64,000 bases of DNA from Stylophora pistillata (GCF_002571385.2 NW_019218054.1:14012-78011), one strand, 5' to 3'; counted from the stretch's first letter, positions 22,890 through 60,600 are shown. The notes: generated by a model from the sequence alone, not told the origin. Numbers and translations are program-made.

Positions 22890-25800
22890 ATGGCAGGCAA
22901 GACTGTTCTGACGGCTAATGTAAGTGGGACTATTGATCCAAAAGATGGTGGCAAGGAACCAGAGGTAAGCTGCTTACAATTCCTCCCCAAAATATTTGAT
23001 ACCGCAACAATGAAATTGAAATTCTGATACTTTACGACACAACATGTATTTGTCGTGGTACATTTGTTTACATAGTTTTTTGTCGAAAAGGTATGATCTT
23101 TAAGCCATAAAAGGACCATTCAATAAAAGCAAATAGTGTTCACATTTGAAACTAGAGAAGAGTTCGGCGGTTTAACGCATCGGTTATCGCTTTACGATGA
23201 ATTTCAGAAACTTTTCATAACTGCGATTTTGGGTTGCTGCAATTTTTCTATTAGTAAGTCGTTCTGAATTAAAGTAAAGCTTAAAAGTGAACAATTCTGC
23301 GGCAAACTACTCTCATATATTTTGAAAGGGAGCGTACACGCTAAGATAACAGCTACAATGATTCGCGGAAAACGGGAAGAAGATTTCAAAAGTTATTTAA
23401 AAATATTTGAAAATTTAAGGGTAGTTTGGTACGCCTGCATTTCAACTGAAACGGTACATGCTACGTTATTTGTAAATCTCCACAATTACTGGAAAAAGTT
23501 GTATTTGTGTAATTTTTCGTAAGAATAGTAGTGTTTTACCGTAGCCGTGCAGTAAAGCTGCTTACTCATGCTTCGGATCGAAAGTGGCTACTCACAAGCT
23601 AGTAGTTAATTACTGATTACTAATCAGGAAGTCCGTCACTAAATTGCTCCAACTTACTTACAAAGCGCTGTGATTTACTCACTATGTGAAATAAAGAGGC
23701 TGGCTTGAAAAAAATTAAGATTTCTAATGCTTAACGAACGACTAGCTCTGGGAAAAGGAAATTAGTATGCAAATATGCACACACACTCAAGTGGGCTTAA
23801 TATGGGTCTGATTTCTTCCTTTTGCAGGCCTATAAAATTACTGTTGTTTTCAGCGACGGTACGAAGACTGTTTTACGAAAGAAATACGAAGAATTTGTCG
23901 ACTTGCAGGTAAGTTTAATGATGTTTTCTTAGAATTGCCGGCCCACACACAAACAAACTAACAAAAGCTTCTTTAATTCCATTGTTCACCTAAACCGTGA
24001 AACGTGTACCAGATAGGATAACATTTGCATAGGCATTTGAAGCGAAACGACAAAACCGCTTTTTCGTCTAACCAAAAAAAAAACCGAATCTACTTTTAGT
24101 GACACAGGAAGTCCCAAGTAACCGCATAAGAAATACCGCACATCCGCGTTCATTGTAAGCGAATACGTGGCAGTATTTTTGGAGTTTTCCCTATTAGACT
24201 TGATAATGTTTGAGCGCAAAGGCACTCATCCATTTTATGTACATACATTGGATCAATAATGAATCGAGGCCTCTTTTAAGACCGTTTTTTCCTTGCTTTA
24301 TCGCAAAATAAATCTAACAAATAGCCATTTTAATTTCAAGAATGTAATTGCCCAGCTACCAAAACCACAATCAATCGTTGTTGACATTCGGTCCATAAAC
24401 AAACCCGACTAAGCCCAATACAAACCTCTGATACTCAAGGATTTTATTTGTAGGTTAAGGTGTACGATTTGCTCAAAAAGAAAGGTGGCTACTCTAGAAA
24501 AACATCGAGGACTCTTGTTTCTAGCTTGCCAGGTACGTATGAGTACTCCTTTAGACAAGATAATTGCCTACGTCTGCCGGCAACACATACTCCTGAAAAT
24601 GGTTTTTATCATCGACGAGTGCTTTTCTCATATCAACGGCTTGTTTTGCTGAAATGATGGAGAACAGAAATGTTAACCATTCAAAATCTTTTGCACGACA
24701 GAAAACAACTCAGCACTTTCCAGAATTCTTTTTAAAGACGACTCTTTGAAGAAGATGGGAAGAATCGATGATTTTATGAAGGTAACGATTTCAATTCATC
24801 ATCTTACAAATCTGATGTATTTTGATCATGAATTCCACTTAGTTCGAAACATTACAAAGCCAAGTTCAAAGTTTCACGGCTTATTTTTCTTTTTTTTAAG
24901 GAGCTGTTAACCCTTCCAACATCAGTGAGGGACTCAGAGGCTATAATGATTTTTTTCGGTTCCTTCGAGCAACAAGGAAAGGGAGACAGGTTAGTACCTC
25001 TGTACTGTGAAGCATAAAGTTGGAACGTTTAGAGATAACTATGGATCTTATTTCTTGCAGATCGCGTGAAGAAGAACTAAAGAAAGTGACAAAAGTTGCT
25101 GAAATACCTAGCGGTAAGGATAATAAAAAATTTCCATGGTCCTTTGAGCAAGGAATGTTTTACAACGCATTTACGATCATGAGGGTTTTGACAACTAGCC
25201 TTGTCGTTTTAAAAGAATGAGATATGTGATATTATTTCCGGTAGAGCAATGGATACCACTCCATGAAATCGTTGATTTTACACATAAAATAATTTCTGAT
25301 ATTTGCAGGACGAGATCCACTTTGGAATCTGCCTAATCAAAGTCCAGTGACAAAGCGAAAGTCAACTCAGAATGCCACCTGGATGCCAGAAGATTTGAGT
25401 ATGCTCAGCGAAGAGGCGAGAGCTCATCTTTATCAAAAGCTGAACAGACTTAGCGAAAGGCGACCAAGCAAAGATGTCCCATTACTACCTCTCAGTAAAA
25501 AAAGAGCGGACTCCGTTGATGATGCTGTTCTGGCCAAGCCAAAAGGATCTCCAAGACCAGGCCTGACAAGGAGGCCAATTAGCGTGCCAGTGGGATTGGC
25601 CAGTATGGTCAGGGAAAGCGATGAGATGAAGGAAAACCGTCCAAGCACCCCCAAGCCTTTAAGAGGTAAAGTTCCCTCGCTACAAACTCTCAGTGAATTG
25701 AATGGGCAACACTCTGGGAGTGAAAGCAGCATTTCAGCACTGACGGACACTTCAGCCATCGATTCTGAGTTTTCCGAAGTAGAAGAACCTCGATCAAGAA

Positions 25801-28800
25801 AGATATCAACCCACTCTAGTGTAAGGAGTACTCTGGGCAGAAAGAACCCAAGCAAGAAAAAATATGTTGCCACCTCAACATTCGTTGCTGAAGAAACTGG
25901 TGAAGTTTCACTGGAAGAGGGCGAAGAAATCGAGGTCGTGCAGAAAGAATCCAGTGGTTGGTGGTACGTTAAAAATGACTTTGTTGAAGGATGGGCTCCG
26001 GAGGCATTTCTTGCACCATCTCAAGGATCAAGGTCTTCATCTCCCGAGTCCCAGGTCCCATCCCAGAGTTGGGACACCCAAGATCAATCAATTGAAATTA
26101 GGCCAAGGATGGAATCCCTTACAGAGAGACCAGATGTAAAAGAAGAGGAGAAAGTTGTACCCCAAGCAAAAGTAAAAGTAAGTAAACGTCGAATTCACGA
26201 ATTTCAAAGGCTTCTGCTTATCATATCTTATTCAGGTTTTCTTTAGTATATCTTGTATAGCAAAACTGTCAAGCGAAAATACACATTTGATGTTTGTCAA
26301 AATTTTATTTCTATGCTAGTTCCTTTCTTCTCCTTCGTTTAGTGAAAAGAATGCGATTTAAAAAAGGCAAAGTTATGAGTCTATTTACCAAACAGACGTT
26401 TTTCCTGCTTTCCTGCTTGCACGAGAGTAGACGTAATTGAGTTGTCAATTATCACGCAGGATGCAAGTGTTCAGCTTCAGGCTTCATTGACTAACTTCAA
26501 TGAAAGAGAAAAGCCTGAGTATCGTACCAAATCATCGATCAATGATTGTCAGGACTTTGAAGTCATAATATAGAACACAATGGCTGCCATAACTTACTTG
26601 TAAAAGATAGATGTTTCCATGAAATACAGTCGTTAGAACTGATGCGTTTGAAGGTTATATGAACAAGAAGTTCATAAGACCGCTCAGTGATTAAAACAAA
26701 TTGAACACTCTAGTTGTGTTAGCTTTGAACTAGCAACGGTCGCGACGTCGGTAAATTAAACAATAAACATACTAAAAATGACTTAGCACTTGAGACGCGG
26801 TTAGTGGTCGTAGATTACATAACACCATTGACGCCATTTCCGTATCACTGCGAGGTGACGCTGTACAATGACAGCGCGGTCGACGCTCATTAAAAGCTTT
26901 TGTACTTTCCATTTTCTAGTCTTTGGAACGTCCCGAGGAAAGAGGTTCTCAAAAGAAGCACATAGAAATGAATCGACGACCCAAATTTCTAACTATTGAG
27001 GGAATCCAGAAACGGAAAAACCCAGACAAAAACTACGTAAGTGTCTGTTTTTGTCTTTCAGCTGTATTAGTTATTTTTCATCATTTTTAAACCAGAATTA
27101 TAAAATGATACCACAGATATCATAACAGACCGATGGGAATTCAAAAATAAATAACACTTTGCAAGATTTTGTTGTAATAAGAGGCAAGAAGTCTACCTGA
27201 GTATGATAGACTCAAAGACGGAAGTAAATCAATGTGAAAACTTCACTTACTACAAATTGCCTGTCGAGAATACCACTCTGGGTTTCAACCTGCATTTCAG
27301 AGATGACATACTTCTGTGATTTCAACTATACAGCATAATATCAAATGAAAATGTCTCAGATTTCTTAAACTTTTCTTTTTATCAACTGTTAACTACAAAA
27401 CTACCGAATACGAATACTACAATTAGAAACTCTCTAGAATCCCAGAAACCAAACATTTCCTACAATCAACGATATAACAATCTTGCGTGCAAAAATATGC
27501 CCAGGACAGACAGCGAAAAAACCCTCAGCTTCAGTGATGTTCAAAAACAATAACGAGACATGATAATAAATATGGATGTGGCTTTGGCGGTAACGCTAGA
27601 ACGTCGCTACTTTCTTTTACGGAAAAAATGAATAAACAAAGTAACACGCAATGTCTGCGGGCTTTCCTTGCCAGGTTTACATCCTCAAAGTGGTTTGGTC
27701 AGACGGAAACATCAATATCGTTTACAGAACTTGCAGCGATTTTTTCTTTCTTCAGGTAAGGCGACAAGGGATAAGGGCACCTTTACAGATTTGTTTTTTT
27801 TTTTTTTATTGTTTTCATTGTTACGGCTTATCTATATTGTTGGTGTGAGTCAATAAAGATATTGCCTCTGTGTGGGCTCTCTCGAACAAAACCTTTACGC
27901 AAGTCACTGTGTGGTTTTATAAACGAAGCGCGGACCAATATATCAACTACGTCGTTGAATTCTTTTAATACCTTGCTAGTAAACAAATTAAGTGAGTTGA
28001 AATATTGCCATGTCATCACACATGAGCCATCAACTCGACGTCAAATAATTGGTTAGCTTGGCAGGTCAAGACTCGCGTGTTGGGTAAGGCGGAGGGGCAC
28101 GTGATGGGCACGTGATGTCAGTCTAGAGGTTATACAGCTGTTCACTAAATAACATTCAGCGAAAAATCTGCGTTTGTAAACTCACGAGGAATCATTTGGA
28201 AACAAAAGAGAAAACAAACCATTCAGAACCTAAAGATCTTTTTTGTTTATTTGAGATAAAGGTGTTAACGTTTGGCGTCTTTTCAACAAAGCGTTGTATA
28301 ACAAGGAAAAAAAGATGACAAATAGAAAGAGCGAAAAGTGCATTAAGTGCTTTATTTGTATTTGTTTCAAAACACATCTCAAGATTGGCTTTCCAGTTTA
28401 TTGATCTACAGGGGGTCACTTGGAAAAATGAGTTTTGGCAACTTTTGTAATTCAATACTCTATGTTTTGCTTTTGAATTTTCTTAGGAAAATCTCAGAAA
28501 GGAATGTCCAAGTGCCATTGGAAAGGAAATTCCTGCTTTGAAAGGTAAACTTGAACTGTTTATAAAAATCCAAACTCCAATCCTTTCTGCATAACTATGA
28601 TAAAATCCAAAAAAATCCAAAAATCCAATCCTTTCTGGTGGTATACCAAGAGGCGAAGATCTTTTCACTGAATCATTTCCGTGGCCTGACTTCTATTCAA
28701 GTTAGCTCTTTCGACTCGAAGGTTATGCGCCTCGATGAAAATTTGGGGAGAATAATACGTAATGTTATCTACTCCTAACGTTTCAGAACAGTACATAAAA

Positions 28801-31800
28801 TTCATGTTTAAAAAAAAAATATAGGTTTACAAAGAAACGTTTTAAAACTCAAAAGTATTGCGTGCGTGAGATCTGAGGAATGTTTTATGATCTACTATGA
28901 AGCAAATACAAGTAATAAGTCCATCAGAGCATGACTGGAATTTTAATATATATCTAAATTTTTGTTGTTCTTTTTGTATGCATTGCAGGAAGAAAATTCA
29001 CCGAGAACTGCCAGTTCTGCTTCAAGGATGGAACATGCAAGAGACAAAAATTCATGAACCAGTTTTGCCATGTAAGTAAAAAGCTTTTCATTGCAATTAC
29101 CAATATCTTCTGAAAAGACCTTTGCCGCGTAAAACAGACACTGGATTGTTCTAACAATTTTTCTCTTGCCCTCTTTTAGGAACTGGTGAATGCACCCGAC
29201 CACATCTCTAGAAGCAAGGTTGTCATGGATTTTTGCAGGTCTCGACCTAGCGATGTGCTTCCTCATGGAGAGTGAGTAATATTTTTTGTTTCTTCTGGTG
29301 AAATGATTTTTATCATAGTTATGCAGAAATTAAAATAACTTGATAGATCAAATAAATCTGTTGTTTTTTAAACAGTTTTTCATTTTGAAAGTTTCGCTTG
29401 AATATTGAATTGGTAAATAACATTTCTTCCACCTTTTATCTACCATTAGGGTTGGAAAGAAGGATGGAAAGTCTACGGGCGGTAAGTAAAGTCAACTAAA
29501 TCTAATTTGTCAGAAATACGCAATTAATTGATTAGAAGTTAAATCACGCATTTGTTAATAATTTCAGATGACGACGAGAACGTCCAGATCTCTGGTCCAG
29601 TGGTTTTTGAACAATATGAAGTAATATGCGATTATAAGAAAAAGAACAAGAATGACATTTCCCTACCAGCTGGAGATGTCGTTGACGTCATAGAGAAGAA
29701 TGATTACGGTGAGTAACTTGGAATTTTGAAGACTTTTTTTTGCCCATTAACATCCTCGTTTTAGTAAATATTCTTCCAAACACTCTTGAAACCCTCTTCA
29801 AATCATACGCGAACCCGGCATCCGCATCTCTTCTTTTTTTCCAACGTTTTTGTCCAGTCTTTTACGCGTTCTCCTTCACCTTATTCTCTAACGGATCAAT
29901 TATTTGATCTCCTTTTCAAGGCTGGTGGCTTGTTGATCGTGATGGAGAGTTAGGGTGGGCTCCTGCTTCTCATCTTGAGCCCACAGATGATGGGGCTGAG
30001 GTAACCTCAGCAAAACACTTTGCACCAGGGAAAGGTAGGTTGAAATAGTTGGAATAGATCTCTTGCCATGAACATTTCTGAAATTTCGTGCATCAGAAGA
30101 ACAACGGAGATACCTTTTTCAGCTATCCAAACTGTTGTGATAACATTTTGAATACGTAAAGTTAAATTTTCATTTGTATAATGTGTGGATTCGAAGATTT
30201 TTATAAGGATTATAAAGCAATGTTAATAGAGTCATCAGATGCGAGCTATGATCCACGCCATAAACAATGCACATGTCATTCCACCCATAAACAATGTGCA
30301 GCTGTAGTAACATCTGAATAGGGACCTTAAGAAACCACGACGGCGACGGCAACGAGGACGTAGAAAAACAAGAGATCTAATTGGCAGAACAATAGCTCAG
30401 CAGTGAGTTTTGAAACTTTATACATTTCTTAGCCGTCCTATGCAAAACAACACCGTGAAATCGCCAAAATTTGCGTCGTCTGCAAACCGAAACCGCGACG
30501 GCAAATTATCTTAATTTCCATTTGGAACTCAACGGCTACTTTATACGTCATTCTGAAGTTGAGCTGTGGCGCTGTATGAGATAGTAAGCTCCTGCAGCCA
30601 TTTTTGAAATTCTAACTAAGAGTAGAAATTCATTTTTTAATCGAAGTCTTCCTTGGCGTCGCCGTCGTGGTTTCTTAAGGTCCCCATTAACTTAGCTCAA
30701 ACTCCGTCTAAACTCTCCACGACTATTAAGCTGTCTCCTTCAACGTGTAAGTGTTTGATTGTTAAGCCAACCCATGTTTTGTGCATCAGATGAGATGTTA
30801 ATCAGGAAATTCTTAGAATTCTGAAAAAGGAACGAAAAAAAAGGTAAAAATCCTAAGCTGAAATATACGTTTTTGTCCAACAGAGGAGATCTACGTGTCA
30901 ATTAAACGTTATCAAGCTACAGCTGCGGACGAATTGTCTTTTGATGCTGATGTTATGTTAAAGGTGGTTGAGAAGACCTTGGACGGATGGTGGCTCGTAA
31001 GGTATTCCACAAATAAGAATTTCTAAAGATCTTCTTTCAGCCCGTACAGTTGAATATTTTTTAATTTTTAACTTCAGTGGAACGGGTAATGAATTGTACA
31101 TTATAATAATTTGTGTTACCAGGTATCAGGGTGAAGAAGGATGGGCACCTGCCATGCATCTGAAAAGAGTGAACTCAGACGACTCAGTAAATGCAGAAGA
31201 CAGCACTTTGGATCAATTAAACATCGTCTCCAACGATGACGGTACAATTGAGTTACCAAGTGTTTTTCTTTAAGATATGATATATTTCAATTTACAAAGC
31301 AACCAGGTGGATAATCGAAAAGGGTTTGATGCTACTCTGATTTAATAAATGTAACCGAGGAATTATACTTCATTGACCCAACGTTTCGACACTCCTGTCT
31401 AGTACCTTCATCAGGGGTAATCTAATCGTTGCATTAAGAGGTCCTTTTTCTTTCATGTGATCGATGATTTTTTTTTCATTTTAAACGTCGTCGTAGAAAA
31501 ACAATTCTTCTAGGTTCCCAGAAAAAGGCAAATCAATGACCTTTCAGCTCGTGCTCGCTGGGATCGACCAGTGAGCCATGGGAGGTTGATAAAGCATTAT
31601 CTTAAAACATTAACTACAAACTGCCAGTTTAGAGAGAATAATACCAAAACCCGAGCTCATAAAACTTCATTTAGCCTGATGAAGTAGTTTCCATTCATTA
31701 AGATACTGTTTCCAGAAGTTTAAGCCTTGAAATAAATGCGAAAACCTTTCAACACGAGTTAATATGTCTGATGAAATTTTCATTTCTTTATAATAGAGTC

Positions 31801-33193: not shown

Positions 33194-35130
33194 GCTCTAG
33201 CAACTCAAGCGCAAAAAAAATGAACAGGAAGTGTTAGAACTTTACCAGCAAATGGGTCACACGCACAAACCGTCGTAAAAGAACTATAACTGGGTAAATT
33301 TCAAACATCTGTGCTCTTTGCTGGAACCTGGGTGTGTAATCTTGCACAAGGCTTATTGCCAAATACAGTACGCCATACCAAAAGTTAATAAGTTCTAATA
33401 AATTAACCTTGATCGGGGGCAAAGTGGAGGAAATAAGGCGCAAGCTTTTGACGCAGTTTTTCCTGAGTACTATTCTTATTTTCCCGTCTCCTATTGTTCC
33501 AATTGTTAAGTCTATTCTACATCTGACTTTGCTTCTAAAATTTAAAAATCATGCTAGTACACTAAAAGGTATTCTTAAGTATTTTGTAAAATATATGAGT
33601 AATCATTAAAAGTTCGCGTGTTAGATTTTAAGGTCATATATCACATAGAGAAACCAAAGTTATTCCAAAAAAAGGTTTTTTTGCCTATCTATTCTTTACA
33701 GATCACAGTTAGAGCGATAAATGTTGATTGAGAAACAGATTTAAACTGTAGGCTACGTCATTACTAGCTTTAGAATCTAGTTAATCGTCTAACGCGTCCA
33801 TTGTAAAGAAAAAAAGCACTAGAGCAGAGATATCAGCAAGTAAAGATTGTACAAAACATAAGTCGTAAATACCCATTTAATTTCAGCAACGCAAGCTTAA
33901 CAATATGCGTTTATAAAAATATTACTTGACGAATTACTTTTTTAAGGTAATTAACGGTCTTTTAACTGTTGTAACTTTTGATTAATAAAATGACATTGTA
34001 TTATGAAAGAAACTACCAAAACTTTTCTTGCTAGTTTGATTCTAGTTTGAAAAATTTTAGTGCTATAACACATCCGTTAAGTAACAAAGTCAACTGAAGG
34101 GAGGCCAAATTGAAATAGTCTTGATCTGTTTTTTCAATTACTTACTCCAGTTCCTGATAAGCGAAAATTAAGTCAATATATGAAACAAATGCTATCTTTG
34201 GTAGAACGCTTTATATACTAGCAGCTTTCATTCTCACCAAAAGAAGAAAAGAAAAAAATCTCTCTCTTCATTCCCTCCTATAATAGGAGAAAGAAACGAG
34301 AAGGAGAAAAATATGTACCGGAGAAGTGAAAGAAAACTACGATAGCGAATCCTCATTATATATTGTATTCCAAAGGCAACCTCCCTCAAGTTAATTTCGA
34401 CTCGAGATATTTTGCATCTCCAGAATAAAGTACTAGCAGCGTGCGTATTGCTGGAATGCTTCGGTGGAGAACAACCAGCCGCTGCATGAGATGCCCACAC
34501 GAGCGAACCATGCGACACGAAATTGGCCATTTCTAGATTTTCCTAGGATTTTTTGAAAAGCTGCTCTACTTATGTCAGATTTTACTTAAATGAGCAAAAA
34601 TCGCTCTTAGCTCAGGCCTGAATATGAGATCCACACATTCAGAGGATTAGAGAGAGGCAAACACACTGATGCTCGGAATAGCAACTCTGCAGCCTCCTCG
34701 CCTAAGGAATTGGCAGATAATCCTGATATGGGAATCGCTAGTTCTCGGGCTTTCCCAACTTGGTACTTTCAATATGTAATCGTTGTCGAAAAGTACTTTT
34801 TCAGTGATCAGTGAAATTTTTTTGCCTTACTGAGTCCCCCAACATTGACTTGAAACCTACGTTTTGGTGGACACTAGCAATGACATAAGGGTGAAACGTC
34901 GGTTCACTATAGGGAATCCTACCCGAAAATCCATTCTCTACCAAACTACAGACCCTCTCTCAAAAAAACTGTCTCGAACATTGAATAAAGAAACAAAAAA
35001 ATATAATTAGAATCAATAACAAAAACGCTATAGTTTAAGAACAGTCTACTATTCACAAGTGGTCTCTTCGTGTGTTTAAGATATACCAATGTTTGGCCTG
35101 AATAGGCAGTTCTTTTTTCGATCTGACTTT

Positions 35131-50100: not shown

Positions 50101-52702
50101 ATATTCCAGAAAATTTCCGCTGACATCGAACGGTTCAACTTTGAGGCCAGAATTTTGAGCACTCTTTCTCGTTTTTTTGGTAGTTAACAAAGTATGACGT
50201 TCTTTGCAGTGCGTGACTCTACGGGATCAGTATTGTCTCCTTCTTCCTAGTTAATAGGTCACGATAGATTTATCGGAACACAGAAGGCATTAAAAGAATA
50301 GATGCACTGAGGAAGAAAAACGCTGAGCTGTGCCGACATGAATTACGCAATGAACGTTCAGGACTCAGAGAGATAGCCTGTAAACTTTGGAGCATCCTAG
50401 TCTGTTGTTTTTACAACGAGGTGCTTCCGAAAACAGAATAATTCGACATTTAAAAAGAAATGTTTCAGAGGCAAGCCTTCAATCAAGTGACATGCCATGA
50501 CTTGCATCAAACCACGAAAAAAAAAATTAACTTGAATACTGCATGATAATTTACAAAAATTAGGTTCATTGTGCAAGAGATTCCCAGATTTCTGAGACTT
50601 CATCGCTCTAAGACACGAAAATGCAGCCTTTTAGGTTCAAAAACACATATTCTCTTTTAGACATAAAGCAGAAAAAAACTAAGGTCAAAACCTAAATCTG
50701 AGAGATTCAATATTCTATACATTTCCCTTTCCAGAGTCATATCTTGGTAAATTGTGAACTGCAGTTCATTGCGAGTCCAAGAAAACTTAATTAACTACAC
50801 AATGAACTATTCATTGTCCTTCAAACGATCTGCCACTGCAATTCATCAGGAACCTTTTAGTCGCTCAATATTTCAATTATGAATATACAATTAAGTTGGT
50901 GGGAATAGAACATTACATTTTTTTCATTGTTGAAAATTTCAAAGGATCGACCATAAAAGAAAATGTTGACTCCATTTCTAACACAAATTACCATTCAGAT
51001 GGGATTAAATACATGCACTAAGCAATGAACATGTCTATTGCGAACAAATCAACAAACCTGCAGGTGTAAGAATTCGCTGTATCTGCGATATACCAAGTTC
51101 ACTGTGCCATCTGACCATGAAACCTTGACACAAAACATCTGCAGAAACGGATGAGAAAGAACAGGATAAGTTTGGAAATATTAAAAACAGAGTTAGGCCA
51201 TTGAAGTATTTCGTAGTCATTAAATAAAGAGTTGCGATACATTAAACGTTATCTTCATTCAAAGAACCATTTAAAAGAGTTGCCTCATGGGTTCAAACGA
51301 TAATTTTGTCGTACCGACAGGAAAGTCTTAATTCAAGACTTAATCGATCTTTTTTTAAGTCCTTTGAACAGTTTAATCTCTTTTTTTTTCTATCGGTCTC
51401 TTTAAGCCACAAATATTCGAAAATGAATATTTGTGTTTATAGTCTACCAATGAAACTGAATTTCGAGGTACCTCTGCATGAAATGGTCCTCTAAAAAATT
51501 TATTTGTTACAAGTCACTAACACTTCGGAACTCTCTGGTAACACACATTAAAGTGTTTCCAGAAAGCACCTTGACGAATCCTTGAACAAAACAGATTTTT
51601 GACTTTCGATTTTAATGTGAATACTCCCAAATACATTATTTTAAAATCTACTTGTAGACACTTTTAGATTTACATATTGAAGTATCAAAACTGCACTAAT
51701 TTTTACAATTTCAAGCGTTTCTTAGAGCACAACCTGATCAGTGTTATCATTTTTCAATTGCGTTCATAAAATAATGCTAAAACTTCGAAGTGCACTTCAA
51801 TTATTTGACCCTTCACGTTTGCCCAAAGCTATCTTAAGAACGATCATTTCAAAGAGTTTTCTCAAGCGTTAAACACTTGGTTATGTTTATACACCAAATT
51901 CGATGAACAAGTTGTACGAAAACAAAAATACTCGCGTGCATAAAAGAATGCTACAACTCCGATGTCCACTAAAGCCCGAGTTCACTCTTCACTTTCAACC
52001 GAAGCTATCTTGAGAATGATTTTTACAAAGATATTTCTCAAGCGTTAAACACTTTGTGATGTTTATAAAGCAAATCCGATGAACACGTACAAAATTAAAA
52101 AATGCGAAGCGTAAGTAACTGTTGTTTTCTTTGTCTAAAAGCAGGAGTTACGCAAGGTAAGCTGTAGTAAGGGAATCCCGGGAGGGAAAGAAATGATACG
52201 AACCGGTTATTTTTTTGCTGAGGTTCCTCCCACTTGCATAAGCCGGATCACAAATTTGCATACGTAAGATATCTGTTTCAAGGTTAAAATTTAGGCGGAC
52301 TGTCTAACCAAACAGCTGAAATAGGCCATTTTGTCCTTCAGCAGCACGTAGATTCGTGCCAAGCAATGACTTACTTATTTAGGAATTGGTGTTTTTCTGA
52401 GCTACACTTATGCGTTTACAAATAAGACGCCAACAAAACTATTTAGCCAAGTACCTCTCATCGCTCCAATCACGCAAAGATTGTCACACACAAATTCCCT
52501 TACTGCTATCTTCCCTGGAACTTTCAAAACTGATAATTGCGTAACTAGTTTTGAACTGTTGATTGCCCAAAACAGGTTTCATCGTTACAGACATCGCTTA
52601 GCCACAATATGTTAATAAATGAAAACTTACGAAGTGTTTTTTAGGTTTGGTTCGCCGTTGCACCCCTTCAACAGATGCCTCTTTCACCGTTCGATTCTCC
52701 AT
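35131..52702 (-). CDS. PX-SH3-SH3-SH3-SH3 protein (SH3PXD2/Tks4-like architecture, NADPH oxidase organizer family), about 832 aa, 12 coding exons
   Basis: Exons: 52702-52631 (MENRTVKEASVEGVQRRTKPKKHF), 51138-51058 (MFCVKVSWSDGTVNLVYRRYSEFLHLQ), 47188-47113, 46890-46805, 45296-45199 (PX); 44859-44768 (basic insert); 44211-44080, 43350-43237 (SH3A); 43132-43015, 42394-42234 (SH3B); 41550-41519; 36567-35131 (acidic/Pro-rich linker plus two SH3). All GT-AG, phase-consistent, total 2499 nt. Confidence 0.87.
37044..38200 (+). pseudogene. Harbinger DDE transposase (HARBI1/DDE_Tnp_4-like), defective
   Basis: Exons 37044-37498 and 37587-38200 with FRMTKEQF, ERLAVTLRYLATG, WNFPNGIGAINGKRV, GDDVF, FNYRLSRMRRSSENCFG. 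Frameshift in the (CT)n near 37090 after the ATG; the first catalytic Asp of GAIDG reads Asn. Confidence 0.85.
38611..38663. repeat. Mini inverted repeat (hairpin) inside the Harbinger
   Basis: ttccctgctagcagaggc...gcctctactagcagggaa, 18-bp arms with one mismatch. Confidence 0.7.
39988..41197 (-). pseudogene. Harbinger second gene: two MADF/Myb-like domains plus BESS-like tail, defective
   Basis: ATG at 41197 with in-frame TAG at about 41156-41158; SRWKFFDSLSYM and WTENETEQLIEYYQQNDILWNHSLSSYRDRD...IKSRWNVLKTFFSRE...YTSQWRYLKSLMFI. A downstream exon at about 40325-39988 gives HLAIAKKRINDVIFDLEM after a frameshift. Confidence 0.8.
45470..45896. mobile_element. Degenerate MITE (agggactggtcattatt-type termini) containing a nested SINE
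   Basis: Left agggactggtcattatt, right aataattactgttcctt; a related terminus aaaaataatgaccggtccct lies at about 56064-56084. Confidence 0.5.
45550..45803 (-). mobile_element. tRNA-derived SINE (second family)
   Basis: Minus strand AGGCGCGGTGGCTTCATGGTTAG (A-box) and GGTTCGAGCCC (B-box), followed by a central gtgttcttagacaagacactttactc...aaatgggtacc block reminiscent of conserved SINE central domains. Confidence 0.75.
47340..47649. mobile_element. Tourist/Harbinger-type MITE
   Basis: TIRs gggaccgttcattttttac / gtaaaaaatgaacggtccc flanked by TAA on both sides (47337-47339, 47650-47652). Confidence 0.88.
49803..50064 (+). repeat. 37-bp minisatellite, about 7 copies
   Basis: aagcctc(caagaaa|taagtca)gaaaaataaaacccatgcactgt repeated in tandem. 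Confidence 0.9.
51780..52085 (+). repeat. Diverged tandem duplication, about 175-bp period
   Basis: aagctatctt.agaa.gat...ttctcaagcgttaaacact...gatgaaca at about 51826 and about 52002. Confidence 0.75.
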
Positions 52703-55700
52703 CGTAACCAGAACTTAGTTCAGTTCACGTTGTTTTCAGTTTCTACAAGCACAAATATTAACGCCTAATCTCTTCTGTCGCTTGCTCCAAAACCACTACA
52801 TTAATCAACAACAATGACGAAAATGTATTAGCATTTGGCACTTTCGCTCTAAGAAGCCCACTATTATTGCATATATTCCATGCTTCGTTTGTCAAATAGA
52901 ATTGAACACGTAATCCTTATCAGCGACGTAAGCTTTGCGGCGAATATTGAAGCGGTCAAACAAAAGTCCATGATCAGTATGTATATCGTAGGTAGAAGAC
53001 ATCGATGCCAGAACTCACTTTTCAAAGAAGGCAAATAAAAGAAAACGCCGAAGACTTTTCTTGATGTTCATTCCAAACAACCGGTATTCGTGCTAAAAAT
53101 TTTACAGCTCTCGTTCCTATCTACATTTTCTCACCCCTGTCTACTGAAGAAAGGGGCCTTGCGGTTATCTTCCAGGCATCAGGAATGAACAAAAAAGAAA
53201 TAGTTTTACACGTGCACGATGATATCAGGCACGTCTTCTCGGAGAATGGTTTCAGCAAAACACTTGAGATACGTGTTGTCTCTTGGATATTCGAATACAG
53301 TTCAACAATAGCTGTTAATGACAGATACAATGAGTGGGAATACTTAGGGCGATATTTATTATTTTATTCTTACGTAAATAATCGATAGATACTTCGTGAT
53401 AATGTGTTGCGAGCAAGTCTAATGTAAAAAAAATTCTTCAAAAAAGCAATGCTTCGGATTTATCTGACGCTCTTAAGATTCTAACTGATTGCACACCCTT
53501 CGATGAAAGTGAAACAAAGAATATTTAATGACGCATGAATTCGGTCAAAGCGAACCCTTGAGTGTCGTCCTTTGTTTCAGAGTTCCTCTTTCTAAAAATA
53601 GTATTGTTTAGAAGCCAGTTCATTTGGAATAAGTACGCTTTAAAATCTGTGTCTAGTATTTTTAAAATGGATCTAAGCCTTTCCGTGTAAAACAACAATC
53701 GATAAACTATTGGAACTCCGATGTTGTTTATCAGTCCTAAAGGCTTTGGAATTCCGCCAAGAGTGCCCATAATTTGACTCTCATTACCGAGCCCAAGTTT
53801 TTTCAGCATAGCGCATGATCGGCTCAGGGAAATGGGACGGTACCCAGCCTAGTTCATCGTGAATTTCCACGAGCCACCATCCACCTTTACTTTTCCGTAT
53901 CACCTGCACTATGTCTCCCTCGTACGAATCAATCATACCATTTTCTGTGGCCTGGTAGCTAGCAGTCGCTTGATAGACTTGTCTTCTGTGCCATTTGGAG
54001 TGGCTAATCGAGGTCTTGACTACAACCGAGTGCATGCGTTTTGAATGTATTCTTCTCTTTCTGCCCTAAGATGCAGATGTGTTAAACACCGATAGATCGT
54101 CACTGGAGGAATTTTCGTAAGTCGTGTGGTTTCTCATCACTGAAAACAAGTCGTCATCTGTAGATCCATAGGCATAGCGCCTGTATGAAGGTCCTTCCTG
54201 ATTGATTCTAAACTTACGGGGTAATTGTTCATGTTTTATTCGTTGTCTTAACATTCATTTACCACATTACGTCAAGTAAAAATTAGGTACTTAGGGTCAA
54301 GATCACAACTTTCAAAGTAAAATAAGCTGATAGAACCTGACACAGTATGTTGGAGGGAGAGCTTCTGATCTGACGAATGTCTCTTGGAATGCAAAATATA
54401 AGATGTAGATCTCGATGAAGATGAAGATGAAGATCTAGAGTGGGAACTCAATCCCCAATGATCCTGCGATCCTTACCATTAGGCTGTGCTCTTCCTTGCA
54501 GCTCTCCTTCGCGGATGTCATCCATTTCGTCATCTCTCAGCTGAAGACCCACTGCTGCCATCCGTCTTAAATTCTTTGCCGAGTTACCTGATGAAATCCT
54601 CTTAAGACTTAAGATAAACAGATGGCGCCCAACCTTCTTTGTTACCATATCTAGGAAACAATTTTTCATAGTACAGTTTTAGATGACACAAGCATGTGAG
54701 GTGTGAGGTAAGGCAGATATGAAAATCCAACCATTCACATGACTGTTTCCCTTAAAAAGGAAAATTTGCAGCGGTATTCTTGTTGGATATCACATGGCTG
54801 ACTTACCTAACCCTCCACCATCCGTCGAGAGTTTTCTCGATCACATAAAGATTCACACCGATTTCAAAATTGATTTCATCACAGTGCTTCGCCCGGTAAG
54901 AACTTGTGGTCATGTAAATCTCTTCTGTAAAAATAATAACAAAACAAAAAAGTTAATTATTTATTTACTCCGGATTTACATCCCACATTCACAAAGATGT
55001 TTAGAGCTACTGATTTGAAGCCGCTCAAACAAGGTTCAGAGACGCGGTGGCAAAAATTGTCAATGCAATATATTCCTGGTCCAAATTCAATTTCTTTTTT
55101 AGCCTGATTTGCAGTCATCTTTATTACTCTGTAATTAAAGACGCTCTCTCCACAGGAGTGGAAATAATTATCAGACACCTGCCAAGACATATGTGACGGA
55201 ATAACGTCCAACCTTGGTGAAGGTCAGACATTACCCATAGGTCATTAATCCCAGGGAAACTGGTAAAATCTCTGATAAAACCGGGTGGGCGGCCTGACTC
55301 GAGCACAGAATTCACCATTACCTTTCACACAAAAACGAATCAATAACACAAGTATCCACATTTTTTCCATTGTTATTTCTATGATTTTCATACATTCACC
55401 GTCAGTGCAATTTCTTTTTGTCAAGACTAGTCTGTTACTGGATTTTCAAGATCGAAAAATTTTCTGGAATCACATCTTTTTTGAGGAAAATCGCATACTA
55501 AAAGATAGGTTCAATTATTCCTTCCACCAATTTTTCTGTCTTGCGTCTCTTCTGTCTGTCTGTGTTCACCTCAGCGGCTAAAACTGTAACTGGATTCTTA
55601 CCTTGACCGGGGGCAAATATCTCTGTGACAATATCGTCGTCATCGTCGTCATCATTACCGCCATATAAAGGCTTTATGAAGGAGGCTGGTACCCAACCAA

Positions 55701-57147
55701 TTTCACCCTCACAATCTGCATGCCACCAGCCTGACATAAAACCAAGGGAAAAAGTTGGTTTGCTCACTGTATTCCCATAAGAACGCCATCCAAAATTTGA
55801 TCCATTTATTTCTCTAAAGTGAGCGCTGATTTTGCCACTCAATATTTGTCACCAGGGAGGGAGGTCGGGGGATTACTGGGGAGATCACATGGTTTCAGAG
55901 AAACAATGGGGGCATTAGTTGTCTCTAACACAGTATAAAGGGGAGGACTATAAAAAATTGACTGCAAATAATATCATTAGAATACTACAGAAGCCTAGCT
56001 AGGGAGGATAAGGTTAATATCAATGTGACAAAACTTCCGACCTTCCCTCCCCTCCCTCAAGGCAAAAAATAATGACCGGTCCCTTAGCGTTCTTTCAGGC
56101 TCTCACCGCTCTCGTGTTTTTTTATCACACCCACTGTGTATCCTTTGGTAAGGCCAATGTCACTGAGATATTTCTTCTGGTAATTCTCCAACGCAACAAA
56201 CTGCTCCAAAAGCACTGGTTCCCCGATAGAATTTGCTATTGAAACGAAAACATCGCAAAACGGTGAGCTACTGAATTACCAACTGAAGCTCCCGTAGAAA
56301 TATTCTATACTATCCTCACCAAAACTAAGATTTCGTCGCCTTAAGAATTGGATTTATTAATTCCTTCGCTTCTTAATTTTCCAATTTTGGACCAGCTGGC
56401 CAGGCTAACTTTGGAAGTCATTTGGAAAAACCTAATGACAAGAGCCATATACCTACTTTTTATTATTGCAAGACATTTTAATGAAGAGCATCAATCCTGG
56501 AATATAAGCGATTTTTTTTATCCAAAAACTGGAAGTCTTGTACTATTTTTTGGCGTCATTCATCGTTAAAATTGTGAAAAAAAAAGTTTAGTCTCTTACT
56601 CTTCTCTAATGAACCCACCTGTGAGAAATTTCGATGACAACCTCCTTAACAGAGATGATTTCATCGAAAATTTCGACTCTTTTTTTTCGAGGTGGTTTTC
56701 TGCAAGATGCACACACACACGTTCATTCATTGTCAGCCAGATAAATTACCTGAGCTCAAAATAGAAGTTTGATATTGTCTGAGTACATTTGATATTGATT
56801 TATTGAGTCAAGCAAGCACTAACTTTCTTTTGATCCTTTTGAAAACTTCCAGATCCTCAGGGCGCGGAGTAAAAAAACTTGTCACCAGCTCACACCCGGA
56901 TATGTGTTTGGGTAGTGTGATCAAATCCTAGACCATGAATACATTACTAAGGGTGAGTAATATCGTGTACAGGTGGCTTTATTGACATCTGTTTCACAAA
57001 AATTTTGGGTCCACATAAAAAAAAAAAAATTGAGATCTTGAAGGATTCGGTTGAAAATTCCATCACATAAAAATAGACTGTAGCTAGCTAACCTTCCAAA
57101 ACCGAACAGTCCGTTTCTTAGCGCCAAAAAGTGCAATACATGTTCCT

Positions 57148-57149
<2 letters not shown>

Positions 57150-57181
<32 letters not shown>

Positions 57182-57250
57182 GTTTATTGTCTAACGTGAG
57201 GCATGGTTGCCCAATTGCCCGAGCCAGAGGCTCATGTATAAAACGGTAGA
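57150..57250 (-). mobile_element. 3' terminus of a LINE/SINE-type retroposon ending in AATAAA and (TTGA)n
   Basis: Minus strand atgagcctctggctcgggcaattgggcaaccatgcc...aataaactttgattgattg; (aatc)n microsatellite at 57150-57180. Confidence 0.5.
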
Positions 57251-57530
57251 CTATAAATTAATTATAATTAAAGGTAAATTATTAGAAGTACTTAAAACTT
57301 TATAGATAAAAAATATATAAGTTCAGAGTATGAATGATAATTGTAAAATTGTAGGTGATTAATATTGATAATTAAAAGAGTCTAAACATTTTGTTCAGTG
57401 AAAGACATTGCAGTAGATGAATATGAATAAAAAATGACAATGTATGTGTATGTACAATTAAAGTCAACTACACGTATTACATTTACAGATTGGTCCTAGA
57501 GTGCTAAAATCGAAATTCTTAAGTTTTCTC

Positions 57531-57615
57531 AGTTAACTCTTATTAACCTTATTAATCTTATTAACTCTTATTAACCTTATTAATCTTATTAACTCTTATT
57601 AACCTCTTATTAACT
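57531..57615 (+). repeat. AT-rich short tandem repeat (TTATTAA-C/T-C units)
   Basis: ttattaacc / ttattaatc / ttattaactc units repeated about 8 times. Confidence 0.8.
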
Positions 57616-60600
57616 TACAAGGTAGACTCTTGTACTGTGCTAAACCTGCCATGTTACTCACCAGGACAAATTCTTGAATCCTCTCCACCTTCGCATGAAC
57701 AGTTGTTGGTAGGAAACTCATTTTCCCTGAAATATTGAACAGCGATTGTGAGTTTCAGAGTCTTTATTGTGTGTGGTAAACAACAATTTTGGAATATTCT
57801 CGCGATTAGTATTAAACAACTCTCTGGGCAGGGCTGTGATACTAGTTCCACGGGTTTTGATTTCTTCAGGCAAGATGGTTATTTTAATGAGCATACACTA
57901 GCCTCTAGTCACAGAAATTAAACTTGAAAGAAAGTTTCGAAAGGTGACGTTCAAACGATAAGCTAACACACGTGAGTGAGCGATGAAACTGAAGGAAAAG
58001 TTTTCCTTCACAGTCTTAAGATTGCTAATTTTTTCTCGTAATCGAAGCGCAAGAGCTCTAACCCTAGCTTCTTATCTGTATGACTACAACTGAGAAAGTT
58101 GTTTTGGTGAATTTCCTCCAGAGACCATGGCACCTTGGACTGACGGGATCTTGATTCTACTGCGTTTATTCAGTGGAAAAGATGCTCAAAGGTTGCTCTA
58201 AGAAAAAAGAATAAAAGACACCTTTAGTTAGATTAAATGGAAAGAATCTGCTTTCAATTTTGTTAATTGAGCATCACAATACAAATAGATAACTTTGCAT
58301 CTTAAGTGAGCTCTTGTAATGTCTTGATTGAATCTTTATTGCGTCTTTTAAACTACCCTTTCTCTACACCATTTGCAGCTGAATTAACTCCTCTCAACAT
58401 ATTTCTAGTCATGTTATACGAGTTCAAAGTTTTAAGTTTCCGGCTTTCCAAGCCGGTTAACCGTTATGAAGACGGCGCTCCCTCTATGATGAAAGGTCCC
58501 CCACATATTTGGGTTGGGCCGAGCAATGCCAAATCTAAAAGATCGTCTAGATGAACAACATAAATGACACCAAAAGTAGAAATAAAAGAGACAATTTCAA
58601 GTACTCACGCCCAAGAGTCGTAGAAAGTATCTACTGGGGATTAAGATTAACAGCAATAGACAATACACCATCAATTAATTTTTGCAACAGCTCCTATCCT
58701 AAAGAGGAATACGATTGTACAACTCTACTTACCTCAAGCTGCGTAATTTTTCTGAATCTCCGATATATAATGTTAACGGTGCCGTCCGACCATAAAACCT
58801 TTATAGAATAGACCTTTAAACCAGAAAAAATACACGAATGATATTAGCTGTCCGTTCTTTGCAAGGTATAACAGTAGATGGTAAAAATATCATGTACTTA
58901 CAACGTGATTGCTGGGTCTTTTTCGCTGAAAGCCTTCGACAGAAACTTCCCTTATCACTCTCCGAGGCGTCCCCACTGCTGGGGAATATCTGCTCATGTT
59001 TTACGCTGCTGTCGACGTACAGGTTTGCGATCGATCACTTTGAGAGTATACCACCAAAGGCAGTTACCTTTGTTTTGGGCGCAAAAAGGCACGCAATAGG
59101 TAACGAACCCACTGGAAACTAGGGAATTATTTCCAATAATTCCGATGAAAGAGGAAGAGGAAACACAGCTTTCTAGATCTAGAGTCAATTCCAAGGAGTT
59201 TTCACTGTTCTCTGTCAGGTCCTGAGTGTAGCGCAATTGAAATATTTTTCACTTTTGACTTCCAGTTCACAAAAGATATTAAAAAATAATTGATAAAAAT
59301 TAAATATGGGCTCTTTTGTTCAACCATGAAAGAAACCAAACAACAATGCACTAGAAAATTTCTGTCTTTTTTAAGCTTCGTAGTTCATCCTTCTCCGTAT
59401 ACAGTTAAAAATCTTCATGAGACTTGACCCAACGACTGTTTTCTGCGTGATTTTTAAACCGTGTCAGTTTATACCAGTTGGTGAACCTCAAATGGGTCAT
59501 CTCCAAACAGAAAGCTTTCGCTAACTACCGGAAAAAATACTTCAACTTGCATCCTCTGGAAAAAATTCCCTGGTACTAATTGTTTTAAATTGTACGTCCA
59601 TGCAGCAGCAGCATTGTGAGTCTCTTGTCCCAGGTGCCAAAACAGTTTTAGCGTCTTTTTAGTAAAAAGAACTCTTAATTGTAAAGAGATCCAAGTAGGA
59701 GGGGTCATTGGAATTGAAATATCAAGAAAGTGTTTCATAAAATTTCTATCCTCATTAAACAATGGTTATTTCTTCCCTCTTCTACTGTCAACCCAAGTTA
59801 TCCCAAAATAAAAAGAGGGGGCGAGCTTCCGAAGAAACTGTGGTTTTGCATCGGTGGGGGAGTGGGGAGGGGTATTACAAAATCAGAGTAGATTTTCCCT
59901 TTTGCTGTTCAGAAAGCTGCAGAACTCTTGAACAAGAATTTATCCTTCAAATCGGTGCTCTTATTAACCTCCATGGTATCGGCGGACGCTTTTCATTCAA
60001 CGAATTTTTTTATCGTGTTTTTCACGTTACCATGTTCCCGCTAATGACGTAATTCCATCTATAGCTTTCTTTAAAAAGGTCACTTTAATTATTACGACTT
60101 GAATGAAACAATTGTTCATTGCTTGAAAAGGGACGCGTACGAAAAACCGAACAGTCTTAGTACATCAGATCAAATTGCACCGTCGCGTTGGCTAACGATC
60201 GGCCACCGACATGCAGCCGACGCTCAACCGATCGAACTTTCGGTAAGCCGCAGTCGCCCGACATTTAGCCGACGATATGTCGACTGTATTAAATTCTTAT
60301 TCGATCCCTTCACTGCTACTGACCATCAAAATGAAAAAAAGGTGAACTGCGATTTAAAGAATTGCAGAAGAAGCGTGGAAAAAATATTCAGGCCTTAAAT
60401 GGGGAAAATAGGAAACGTTTTCTAAATTTTTTTTTTCTCTTCCGCACTTCGGTGCTGTAGCTAGTTACCACAATCAAGTTTCACAATGTTGTCCTTTCAT
60501 AGTCTTGTATCCAGATCTCCCTCCAACAGATTAAGGTAGACCTGTATCTTCAAGCTCTTCCCATTATCCTTTGAAGGCGCGGATGCATGCAATCTTTTCA

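What the first reader, a model, noticed from the sequence alone, without database searches (positions are those of the whole stretch)
22890..58997. Local birth-and-death expansion of p47phox/Tks-family organizer genes (four PX units in 36 kb)
Seen in sequence: four PX modules and eleven SH3 domains in three loci (one fused, one intact, one pseudogene) in convergent and tandem orientation, diverged at protein level. Established knowledge: PX plus tandem SH3 with GWW in both domains is the organizer module that binds the p22phox proline-rich tail to assemble NOX complexes; vertebrate members are dispersed. Inference: a lineage-specific, diversified toolkit for regulating ROS production or invadosome-like adhesion, potentially relevant to immunity, symbiosis or stress if this is a coral. 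No NOX, p22phox or p67phox gene is visible in the window, so the function rests on homology only.
Basis: partly seen in the sequence, partly recalled or inferred. Interest (0 to 1): 0.8.

Follow-up and report, generated by a model that had tools for sequence, protein, structure and literature searches.

The report
Coral cluster of PX-SH3 adaptor genes
A 36-kb stretch of the Stylophora pistillata coral genome holds three neighbouring genes of the p47phox/Tks adaptor family (one made of two gene units spliced into a single mRNA, one intact, one broken); the cluster is real but old and shared among corals, and its link to oxidant production is still only an inference.

Summary
The window (Stylophora pistillata, G000:C270) carries four PX modules and eleven SH3 domains in three loci.

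- **Locus A** (+, 22890-33193): polyA RNA contigs splice a PX+SH3 unit onto a PX+3xSH3 unit (joint 26177>26920). This gives a model of about 1074 aa.
- **Locus B** (-, 52702-35131): intact and already in RefSeq as LOC111335367, 828 aa.
- **Locus C** (-, 58997-53784): a pseudogene here, with two nonsense codons, a 7-bp duplication and a lost 3.9-kb exon block.

[quoted passage not shown] Evidence: the PX-SH3-SH3 match to human p47phox (E 1.8e-31), GWW in both tandem SH3s, an acidic linker, and an APTRRSQ autoregulatory-type motif in A.

"Lineage-specific birth and death" is only partly right. All four units fall in one hexacoral clade (97/99) that includes an Actinia gene. B has an Acropora orthologue and C an Oculina orthologue. 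The cluster is collinear in Pocillopora, and the two-PX fusion recurs in mRNAs of other, unidentified species. Only the death of C looks recent.

Whether the clade sits nearer Tks or p47phox/NOXO1 is unresolved (AU p 0.205; no NCF1 sequence was available).

A NOX-organizer role is inference. The genome has a p22phox homologue, and the docking test gave weak support (0.45 against 0.01 for the best control).

The scan also noted the fusion (s1-786191) and the motif exon (s1-786240) on this same stretch.

The parts
22890..33193 (+). Locus A: fused two-unit gene. The model has 19 exons and about 1074 aa (PX-SH3-PX-SH3-SH3-motif-SH3).
   Evidence: Exons up to 28545 come from RNA joints. Later exons come from GT-AG and frame continuity. 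The Pocillopora annotation gives 1072 aa for the collinear gene.
22890..26177 (+). Unit 1 of A. Exons: 22890-22964, 23828-23908, 24454-24532, 24702-24781, 24901-24989, 25061-25113, 25309-26177. It has a divergent PX (RKKYEEF), a long Ser/Pro linker and one SH3 (GWWYV).
   Evidence: All six internal joints are seen in RNA contigs. SH3 Pfam score 37.2 bits. The PX is seen as a second PX stretch in orthologues P0403 and P0425.
26178..26919 (+). Fusion intron between unit 1 and unit 2 (GTAAGT...TAG). If it is not spliced, unit 1 reads on to TAG at 26244-26246.
   Evidence: The joint 26177>26920 is seen in all 4 RNA runs. Donor and acceptor are conserved in Pocillopora. Separate RNA contigs lie inside it at 26296-26646.
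26920..27036 (+). Unit 2 first exon. It keeps its own ATG at 26968 (MNRRPKFLTIEGIQKRKNPDKNY), and the frame is open upstream to the acceptor.
   Evidence: The same junction peptide occurs in P0403 and P0425.
27675..29271 (+). Rest of the unit 2 PX domain. Exons: 27675-27755, 28487-28544, 28989-29071, 29180-29271. The lipid-site motif is degenerate (YRTCSDF).
   Evidence: Joints 27036>27675 and 27753>28485, plus a loose end that matches 28990. Frames.
29568..31241 (+). Unit 2 tandem SH3. SH3-1 is 29568-29708 with 29921-30034; SH3-2 is 30884-31001 with 31123-31241. GWW in both, an acidic linker, and DE in SH3-2.
   Evidence: Pfam on exons; models; signatures. The 3' end of the last exon (31241) is uncertain.
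31797..31855 (+). 59-nt exon encoding ...PRGAPTRRSQ. APTRRSQ fits the weak tandem-SH3-binding motif and is followed by a basic stretch.
   Evidence: Motif definition from PMC12730246. PPTRRS is conserved in P0403 and P0425.
32309..33193 (+). Last exon of A: Ser/Pro-rich linker plus C-terminal SH3; stop TGA.
   Evidence: SH3 Pfam score 37.8 bits. 42% identical to P0403 residues 846-1077.
35131..52702 (-). Locus B: intact gene, PX plus 4 SH3, 828 aa. Exons: 52702-52631, 51138-51058, 47188-47113, 46018-45945, 45296-45199, 44859-44768, 44211-44080, 43350-43237, 43132-43015, about 42394-42229, about 36570-35134.
   Evidence: Exact mapping of P0366 (XP_022796984.1) for 9 exons, and 96-99.8% identity for the last two. 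Orthologue of Pocillopora XP_027041938.1.
36800..41560 (.). PIF/Harbinger-type DNA transposon inside intron 10 of B. It has inverted ends, HTH_Tnp_4 and DDE_Tnp_4 ORFs (37067-38204, +) and a MADF ORF (40406-41098, -).
   Evidence: Inverted matches 36828-37016 against 41324-41479. Pfam. Absent from the collinear Pocillopora intron.
53784..58997 (-). Locus C: pseudogene, PX plus 3 remaining SH3. Exons: 58997-58902, 58813-58733, 58197-58134, 57726-57662, 56927-about 56824, an unclear linker exon, 56235-56107, about 55734-55603, 54925-about 54809, 54649-about 54480, about 54254-53787.
   Evidence: 73-74% identical to Oculina P0213 over the core.
58186..58188 (-). In-frame TGA in PX exon 3 of C (SNL*ASFP). 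The Oculina orthologue has Leu here.
54601..54614 (-). 7-bp tandem duplication TCTTAAG/TCTTAAG just after SH3-2 of C. It shifts the frame and gives ...VYLKS*.
   Evidence: Pocillopora and Oculina read straight through.
54247..54340 (-). Deletion scar in C. About 93 bp stand here where Pocillopora has about 4.0 kb, including a 611-aa exon with an SH3.
   Evidence: No N run lies here. The Oculina protein has the homologous LRDALPNRGLSISELDL repeats.
54066..54068 (-). In-frame TAG in the last exon of C. Pocillopora has CAG within a 306-aa open frame.

Best explanation
The region is an old, conserved cluster of three paralogous genes. [quoted passage not shown]

**Shown.**
- A is transcribed as one spliced mRNA that joins two former gene units into a 2xPX/4xSH3 protein.
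- B is an intact PX/4xSH3 gene.
- C has decayed in Stylophora but is open in Pocillopora at the three lesion sites that the fetched locus covers.

**Inferred mechanism.**
- The PX domains bring the proteins to phosphoinositide-bearing membranes.
- The first two SH3 domains pair through their GWW triplets into one composite groove that grips a short Pro-Arg motif.
- In A that groove is probably closed by its own APTRRSQ motif until nearby Ser residues are phosphorylated, as in p47phox and Tks4.
- The remaining SH3 domains recruit other proline-rich partners.
- One candidate partner is the p22phox tail of a NOX complex. I put that step at roughly one in three.
For: **Family.**
- PDB best hits of the SH3s are p47phox, then Tks5.
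- B aligns over residues 6-305 with human p47phox PX-SH3-SH3 (8WEJ_C, E 1.8e-31).
- Database relatives are named SH3PXD2A/B-like.
- Pfam finds PX plus 4 SH3 for P0202, the B cluster representative, and 2 PX plus 4 SH3 for the A orthologues.

**Tandem-SH3 signatures.** GWW twice, an acidic linker and DE in the second SH3 are present in unit 2, B and C. The criteria come from PMC12730246.

**Motif.** APTRRSQ fits the weak motif. PPTRRS is conserved in the orthologues.

**Fusion.** RNA joints, the Pocillopora 1072-aa gene, and uninterrupted 1081-aa ORFs on mRNA contigs of other species.

**Age.** The tree clade has 97/99 support, B+C are sisters at 97/96, and Acropora, Oculina and Actinia members are present. 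Collinearity with Pocillopora.

**C decay.**

**Partner.** A p22phox homologue scores 53.6 bits and has the tail PPKQPPPRGPRS. NOX-type NAD-binding hits exist. The complex test scored 0.45 against a best control of 0.01, 'weak support'. The mark was reached by 51 of 78 solved complexes and 2 of 108 mismatches, but a score of 0.60 or less came from only 5 of the 78. Contact agreement was at least 51% and partner pLDDT at least 43.
Against: - No experiment or expression pattern links these genes to NOX.
- The coral p22phox tail has Gly where the published motif needs Pro or Arg, so it fits neither motif definition.
- B and C have no internal tandem-SH3 motif.
- The unit 2 PX lacks the usual Arg-Tyr of the lipid site (RTC here, RQC in the orthologues), so its membrane binding is doubtful.
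- The weak docking pass may simply recall the solved p47phox-p22phox complexes.
- Exons of A after 28545 and the linker exon of C rest on splice-site logic only.
- RNA evidence comes from assembled contigs, not single molecules. Contigs lying in the fusion intron (26296-26646) leave room for unit-1-only transcripts.
- The C lesions rest on one assembly.
Confidence: 0.75

Rival explanations
1. The genes are the coral's working NOX organizers, the functional counterparts of p47phox/NOXO1. Their tandem SH3 binds the p22phox tail and assembles a NOX2-like oxidase for immunity or symbiont control.
For: - The p47phox-like core aligns with human p47phox.
- A carries the AIR-like RGAPTRRS followed by a basic run.
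- The genome has p22phox with a Pro-rich tail and NOX-type hits.
- The docking test passed weakly, 0.45 against 0.01.
- The AU test does not reject a clade with NOXO1 (p 0.205).
- Nematostella is reported to have a multi-SH3 p47phox-like gene, p22phox and two Nox2 genes (PMC2121648).
Against: - The best tree puts them apart from the NOXO1 references (98/94 for the other group).
- They have 3-4 SH3 domains and no p47phox-type C-terminal region.
- The p22phox tail does not fit the motif.
- No p67phox partner was sought.
- There are no co-expression data.
Confidence: 0.3
2. They are Tks4/Tks5-like scaffolds for actin-rich adhesion or invasion structures or for receptor signalling, with no special tie to NOX.
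For: - The multi-SH3 architecture and long disordered linkers resemble Tks proteins.
- The best tree nests the clade among SH3PXD2 sequences (80/74).
- Public names are SH3PXD2A-like.
- Tks4 and Tks5 also carry a PPPRR motif between SH3-2 and SH3-3.
Against: - The one-to-one cnidarian Tks orthologue is a different gene (G000:C261, P0208, 6 SH3). The cluster genes are therefore extra copies with long branches.
- Backbone support is weak.
- Human Tks5 itself binds p22phox (PMC12730246), so this rival overlaps the first.
Confidence: 0.3
3. The 'fusion' is only read-through or conjoined transcription of two separate genes. The working products are a unit 1 protein and a unit 2 protein started at ATG 26968.
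For: - Unit 2 keeps its own first exon and ATG.
- A conserved non-coding block lies upstream at 26830-26875.
- RNA contigs lie inside the fusion intron.
- An open frame between acceptor and ATG, in the right phase, would arise by chance about 15% of the time (my estimate).
Against: - The joint is present in all four RNA runs on the main contigs.
- Donor, acceptor and the open frame are conserved in Pocillopora.
- Two clusters of mRNA-derived 1081-aa proteins from other species read straight through the junction.
Confidence: 0.15
4. Locus C is a working gene, and its apparent lesions are assembly errors or are bypassed by splicing.
For: - All splice sites of C are intact.
- The domain exons are still 73-74% identical to Oculina.
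- The TAG at 54068-54066 could serve as an acceptor.
Against: - There are four independent lesions of different kinds, including a 3.9-kb loss with no assembly gap.
- The TGA lies 9 nt inside an exon with a strong acceptor.
- A 7-bp duplication is not a typical sequencing error.
Confidence: 0.1

Closest known systems
p47phox (NCF1) and NOXO1, the NADPH-oxidase organizers
   Same: - N-terminal PX followed by tandem SH3 with GWW in both domains and an acidic linker.
- An Arg-rich autoregulatory motif after SH3-2: RGAPTRRS in A against RGAPPRRS recalled for human p47phox. Thr at the third motif position matches the NOXO1 weak motif.
- B aligns with human p47phox residues 6-286.
   Different: - They have 3-4 SH3 domains, long disordered linkers and no p47phox C-terminal region.
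- A has two PX domains.
- They are not placed with the NOXO1 references in the best tree, though that grouping is not rejected.
- No NCF1 sequence could be included.
Tks4/Tks5 (SH3PXD2B/SH3PXD2A) scaffolds
   Same: - PX plus several SH3 domains separated by long disordered linkers.
- A tandem first pair of SH3 domains, with a Pro-Arg motif before the third SH3.
- Public annotation names, and the best-tree position among SH3PXD2 sequences.
   Different: - The direct cnidarian Tks orthologue is another gene with 6 SH3 (P0208 on G000:C261; Nematostella P0244).
- The cluster genes form a separate long-branched hexacoral clade.
- Vertebrate members are dispersed, not clustered (from memory).
Nematostella 'p47phox-like' gene with multiple SH3 domains (Kawahara and Lambeth 2007, PMC2121648)
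   Same: A cnidarian PX plus bis-SH3 protein with further SH3 domains and a polybasic AIR-like stretch, found alongside p22phox and Nox2 genes.
   Different: Its sequence was not in hand, so orthology to A, B, C or to the canonical Tks-like gene was not tested. No cluster, fusion or pseudogene was described there.

Membership tests
p47phox-related organizer superfamily (NCF1 family: p47phox, NOXO1, Tks4, Tks5) | N-terminal PX domain | tested here: met
   - Pfam PX scores 31.4 bits on P0202, the representative of the cluster that holds the locus B protein P0366 (cut-off 21.6).
- Two PX stretches, 52-57 bits, in the A orthologues P0403 and P0425.
- The Oculina C orthologue scores 28.1 bits.
- Single window exons are too short to pass alone.
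p47phox-related organizer superfamily (NCF1 family: p47phox, NOXO1, Tks4, Tks5) | [quoted passage not shown] | tested here: met
   Unit 2, B and C all show GWW twice and acidic linkers of about 20-25 residues (sequences printed; criteria). Unit 1 has lost the tandem pair and keeps one SH3.
p47phox-related organizer superfamily (NCF1 family: p47phox, NOXO1, Tks4, Tks5) | Double-acidic signature in the second SH3 and Pxx(aromatic)L at the end of the first SH3 | tested here: met
   DE is present in all three (ADELSF, DDELSF, CDEINF). The first-SH3 signature is PALYL in B, and the variants PASFI in C and PASHL in unit 2.
p47phox-related organizer superfamily (NCF1 family: p47phox, NOXO1, Tks4, Tks5) | Internal autoregulatory tandem-SH3-binding motif | tested here: inconclusive
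   APTRRSQ in A fits the weak definition [PAVIL]P[PTAV]R[RP][^DE][^DE]. B and C have no match.
p47phox-related organizer superfamily (NCF1 family: p47phox, NOXO1, Tks4, Tks5) | Tandem SH3 binds the p22phox proline-rich tail | tested here: inconclusive
   - The complex test of B residues 165-310 with the coral p22phox tail scored 0.45 against a best control of 0.01, 'weak support'. A score of 0.60 or less was reached by only 5 of 78 solved complexes.
- The tail PPPRGP does not fit the motif.
p47phox/NOXO1 orthologue | Groups with NCF1/NOXO1 in a tree | tested here: inconclusive
   The best tree separates them, with the NOXO1 group at 98/94. The AU test does not reject a joint clade (p 0.205). 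No NCF1 sequence was available.
p47phox/NOXO1 orthologue | PX, two SH3 only, then a C-terminal proline-rich region that binds p67phox/NOXA1 | tested here: not met
   A unit 2 has 3 SH3, B has 4, and C has 3 (4 in Pocillopora).
Tks4/Tks5 (SH3PXD2) one-to-one orthologue | Is the cnidarian counterpart of bilaterian SH3PXD2A/B | tested here: not met
   The canonical cnidarian clade (Stylophora C261/P0208, Oculina P0245, Nematostella P0244, Actinia P0243) is separate from the clade of the window genes. The window genes are extra paralogues.
Unitary pseudogene (locus C) | Disabling changes relative to intact orthologues, with retained exon-intron structure | tested here: met
   TGA, TAG, a 7-bp duplication and a 3.9-kb exon loss, compared with Pocillopora and Oculina. 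Not verified in reads.

The most novel reading that the evidence does not exclude
Hexacorals evolved their own branch of organizer proteins. Its conserved two-PX member (A) pairs a lipid-site-degenerate PX with a second, different PX, so that the scaffold reads two membrane signals at once. It is switched by phosphorylation at the APTRRS motif and controls a p22phox-dependent oxidase at the phagosome or symbiosome.
Probability: 0.12. Interest if true: 0.7.

Novelty: new variant of a known kind. Interest (0 to 1): 0.45.

Why it matters
Corals rely on innate immunity and on controlled oxidant chemistry during symbiosis and bleaching. How their NOX enzymes are organised is unknown.

This cluster gives named, testable candidates:
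- An intact PX/4xSH3 gene.
- A conserved double-PX fusion with a p47phox-type switch motif.
- A natural knock-out (C) in Stylophora that is open, at the sites compared, in Pocillopora.

It also shows that the p47phox/Tks family diversified in cnidarians independently of the vertebrate split into p47phox, NOXO1, Tks4 and Tks5.

The genes themselves are already in public annotation. The value lies in the architecture and history, not in a new family.

Tried and rejected
- **No NCF1 reference.** All three word-index protein searches were swamped by vertebrate SH3PXD2A entries and returned no NCF1. The tree therefore has only NOXO1-type references (P0147, partial; P0074, a fish model with two halves).
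- **Acropora synteny.** Exact look-ups of the Acropora B orthologues gave no contig, so Acropora synteny is untested.
- **NOX domains in the genome.** The FAD_binding_8 search found nothing here or in any control, so it is uninformative. NAD_binding_6 gave two modest hits.
- **Search for a closer p47phox gene.** Searching the genome with the fish NOXO1-like protein found only weak SH3 hits and no clearer p47phox orthologue.
- **Complex test.** It gave only weak support and is not used as evidence of binding.
- **First guess for unit 2 PX exons.** My guess that exons 3-4 lay at 27849-27965 was wrong. RNA joints put exon 3 at 28487.
- **Linker exon of C.** It could not be fixed, because many frame-compatible options exist.
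- **Literature.** The word 'coral' in the Tks4 paper is a software name. No paper on these coral genes was found.
- **Rejected reading.** An unrelated PX family such as sorting nexins is rejected, because every relative found is PX plus tandem SH3.

Full report
**What the window is.** The window is eukaryotic and intron-rich. It is collinear at 70-83% nucleotide identity with Pocillopora damicornis scaffold RCHS01002416.1. A Stylophora pistillata RefSeq protein (P0208) matches another contig of the same assembly at 100%. The S. pistillata protein XP_022796984.1 (P0366) maps onto the window at 96-100% per exon. I therefore take the genome to be Stylophora pistillata; the window is G000:C270:14012-78011.

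**How spliced models were handled.**
- Joined exon models were built only inside local scripts, from window coordinates.
- They were used there for translation, local BLAST against sequences already fetched, alignment and trees.
Those tools received single exons by reference or public proteins.

**Check of the observation.**
- A six-frame self-comparison found four copies of the PX core exon and three to four copies of each SH3 exon.
- Pfam recognised the SH3 exons, and weakly one PX exon.
- HMMER against 1.8 billion proteins, followed by name look-ups, gave SH3PXD2A/B-like relatives.

**Locus A.**
- Contigs of four polyA RNA-Seq runs, filed under two studies, show GT..AG joints for every intron of unit 1 (X1 and X2 give identical figures and may be one data set).
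- They also show a joint from 26177 to 26920, which links the last coding exon of unit 1 to the first exon of unit 2.
- Further joints run 27036>27675 and 27753>28485.
- One 3617-nt contig runs from 22886 across all of these.
- Donor, acceptor and the open frame upstream of unit 2's own ATG (26968) are conserved in Pocillopora. There the collinear gene is annotated with 1072 aa.
- My model has 1074 aa. Exons after 28545 rest on splice sites and frame only.
- Two clusters of mRNA-derived proteins from other species (P0403 and P0425, 1081 aa; uninterrupted ORF on Logan contig SRR26945562_6294) align along both units. They read through the same junction and score as two PX plus four SH3 in Pfam.
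- The fusion is therefore a conserved transcript form, not an artefact of this assembly.
- RNA contigs inside the fusion intron (26296-26646) leave open an additional unit-1-only form ending at TAG 26244-26246.

**Locus B.** It has eleven exons from 52702 to 35131 and encodes the public 828-aa protein. Intron 10 holds a PIF/Harbinger transposon with a MADF ORF that Pocillopora lacks.

**Locus C.** Canonical splice sites are retained, but there are four lesions:
- A TGA nine bases into PX exon 3, where Oculina has Leu.
- A 7-bp tandem duplication right after SH3-2 that gives VYLKS-stop. Pocillopora and Oculina read through here.
- About 93 bp where Pocillopora has 4 kb, including a 611-aa exon with an SH3 whose repeats recur in the Oculina protein.
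- A TAG where Pocillopora has CAG inside a 306-aa open frame.

No assembly gap lies there. The fetched Pocillopora locus does not reach the TGA site, so that site is compared with Oculina only.

**Family.**
- B aligns from PX through both SH3s with human p47phox (E 1.8e-31).
- The tandem SH3s of unit 2, B and C carry the published signatures of the family.
- A has APTRRSQ, which fits the weak tandem-SH3-binding motif. Its orthologues have PPTRRS.

**Tree.**
- A careful ML tree of 35 PX-SH3-SH3 cores puts all four window units in one clade (97/99). That clade also holds the coral orthologues and an Actinia protein.
- B and C are sisters (97/96).
- The canonical cnidarian Tks-like gene (Stylophora C261, Nematostella SH3PXD2B) forms another clade.
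- The NOXO1 references lie elsewhere.
- The backbone is weak (80/74), and an AU test does not reject joining the clade to NOXO1 (p 0.205).
- No NCF1 sequence could be fetched, so only superfamily membership is claimed.

**History.** B exists in Acropora, C in Oculina and a clade member in Actinia, and the cluster is collinear in Pocillopora. The duplications therefore predate the stony-coral radiation. This is not a recent Stylophora expansion. Only the loss of C is recent among the genomes compared.

**Function (inference).**
- The genome has a p22phox homologue (53.6 bits) with the tail PPKQPPPRGPRS and NOX-type NAD-binding hits.
- Nematostella is reported to have p47phox-like, p22phox and Nox2 genes (PMC2121648).
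- The p22phox tail has Gly at motif position 5 and fits neither published definition.
- The complex test of B's tandem SH3 with that tail scored 0.45 against a best control of 0.01. The tool calls this weak support. The mark was reached by 51 of 78 solved complexes and 2 of 108 mismatches, but a score of 0.60 or less came from only 5 of the 78. Contact agreement was at least 51% and partner pLDDT at least 43. The pass may reflect memory of solved p47phox complexes.

**Verdict.** 'Lineage-specific birth' is overstated, and the NOX role is untested. It is a moderately interesting new variant of a known kind: a double-PX member and a clustered hexacoral subfamily.

Noticed in passing
window 36800-41560: PIF/Harbinger-type DNA transposon in intron 10 of locus B. 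It has inverted ends, HTH_Tnp_4 plus DDE_Tnp_4 ORFs and a MADF-domain ORF on the other strand. The collinear Pocillopora intron lacks it.
   Followed up: partly
window 26830-26875: A block of non-coding sequence just upstream of unit 2's first exon is nearly identical in Pocillopora and contains TGACGC-type motifs. It may be an internal promoter for a unit-2-only transcript.
   Followed up: no
window 26296-26646: Separate polyA-RNA contigs (runs X10, X13) lie inside the fusion intron of A. They could be a retained intron or the 3' end of a unit-1-only mRNA. AATAAA/ATTAAA signals lie at 26690, 26755 and 26762.
   Followed up: partly
window 2455-9838 (- strand): ORFs with two PAN domains (2455-2778, 9374-9781) and a fibrinogen C-terminal domain (7667-8470, 180 bits). 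This looks like a fibrinogen-related lectin-type gene next to the cluster.
   Followed up: partly
window 61999-63069 (+): A 356-aa open frame with no Pfam match, just beyond the start of locus C.
   Followed up: partly
window 46215-46690; 49621-50183; 63414-63679; 11720-12066; 14943-15580: Several short tandem duplications show up in the self-comparison. The one at 46215-46690 has a period of about 201 bp, is 93-100% identical, and brackets the single N at 46412 in an intron of B.
   Followed up: no
G000:C482:152771-155709 (L006) and G000:C622:148097-148279 (L007): Two further family members elsewhere in the genome. C482 has SH3-SH3...SH3 followed by PIRPPKSP. C622 has a PX exon with FPAEAG...IIPYLPG. 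Either could be the closest coral counterpart of p47phox.
   Followed up: partly
P0074 (Siganus canaliculatus KAM3591856.1, 793 aa): A fish gene model with two PX domains whose halves both resemble NOXO1/p47phox. It is probably a merged annotation of tandem NOXO1-like genes, and an independent example of local duplication in this family.
   Followed up: partly
L001:3684-5519 (Pocillopora damicornis): The Pocillopora orthologue of C has a 611-aa exon with an extra SH3 and LRDALPNRGLSISELDL repeats shared with Oculina. Its annotated product is 1300 aa and runs beyond the fetched locus.
   Followed up: partly
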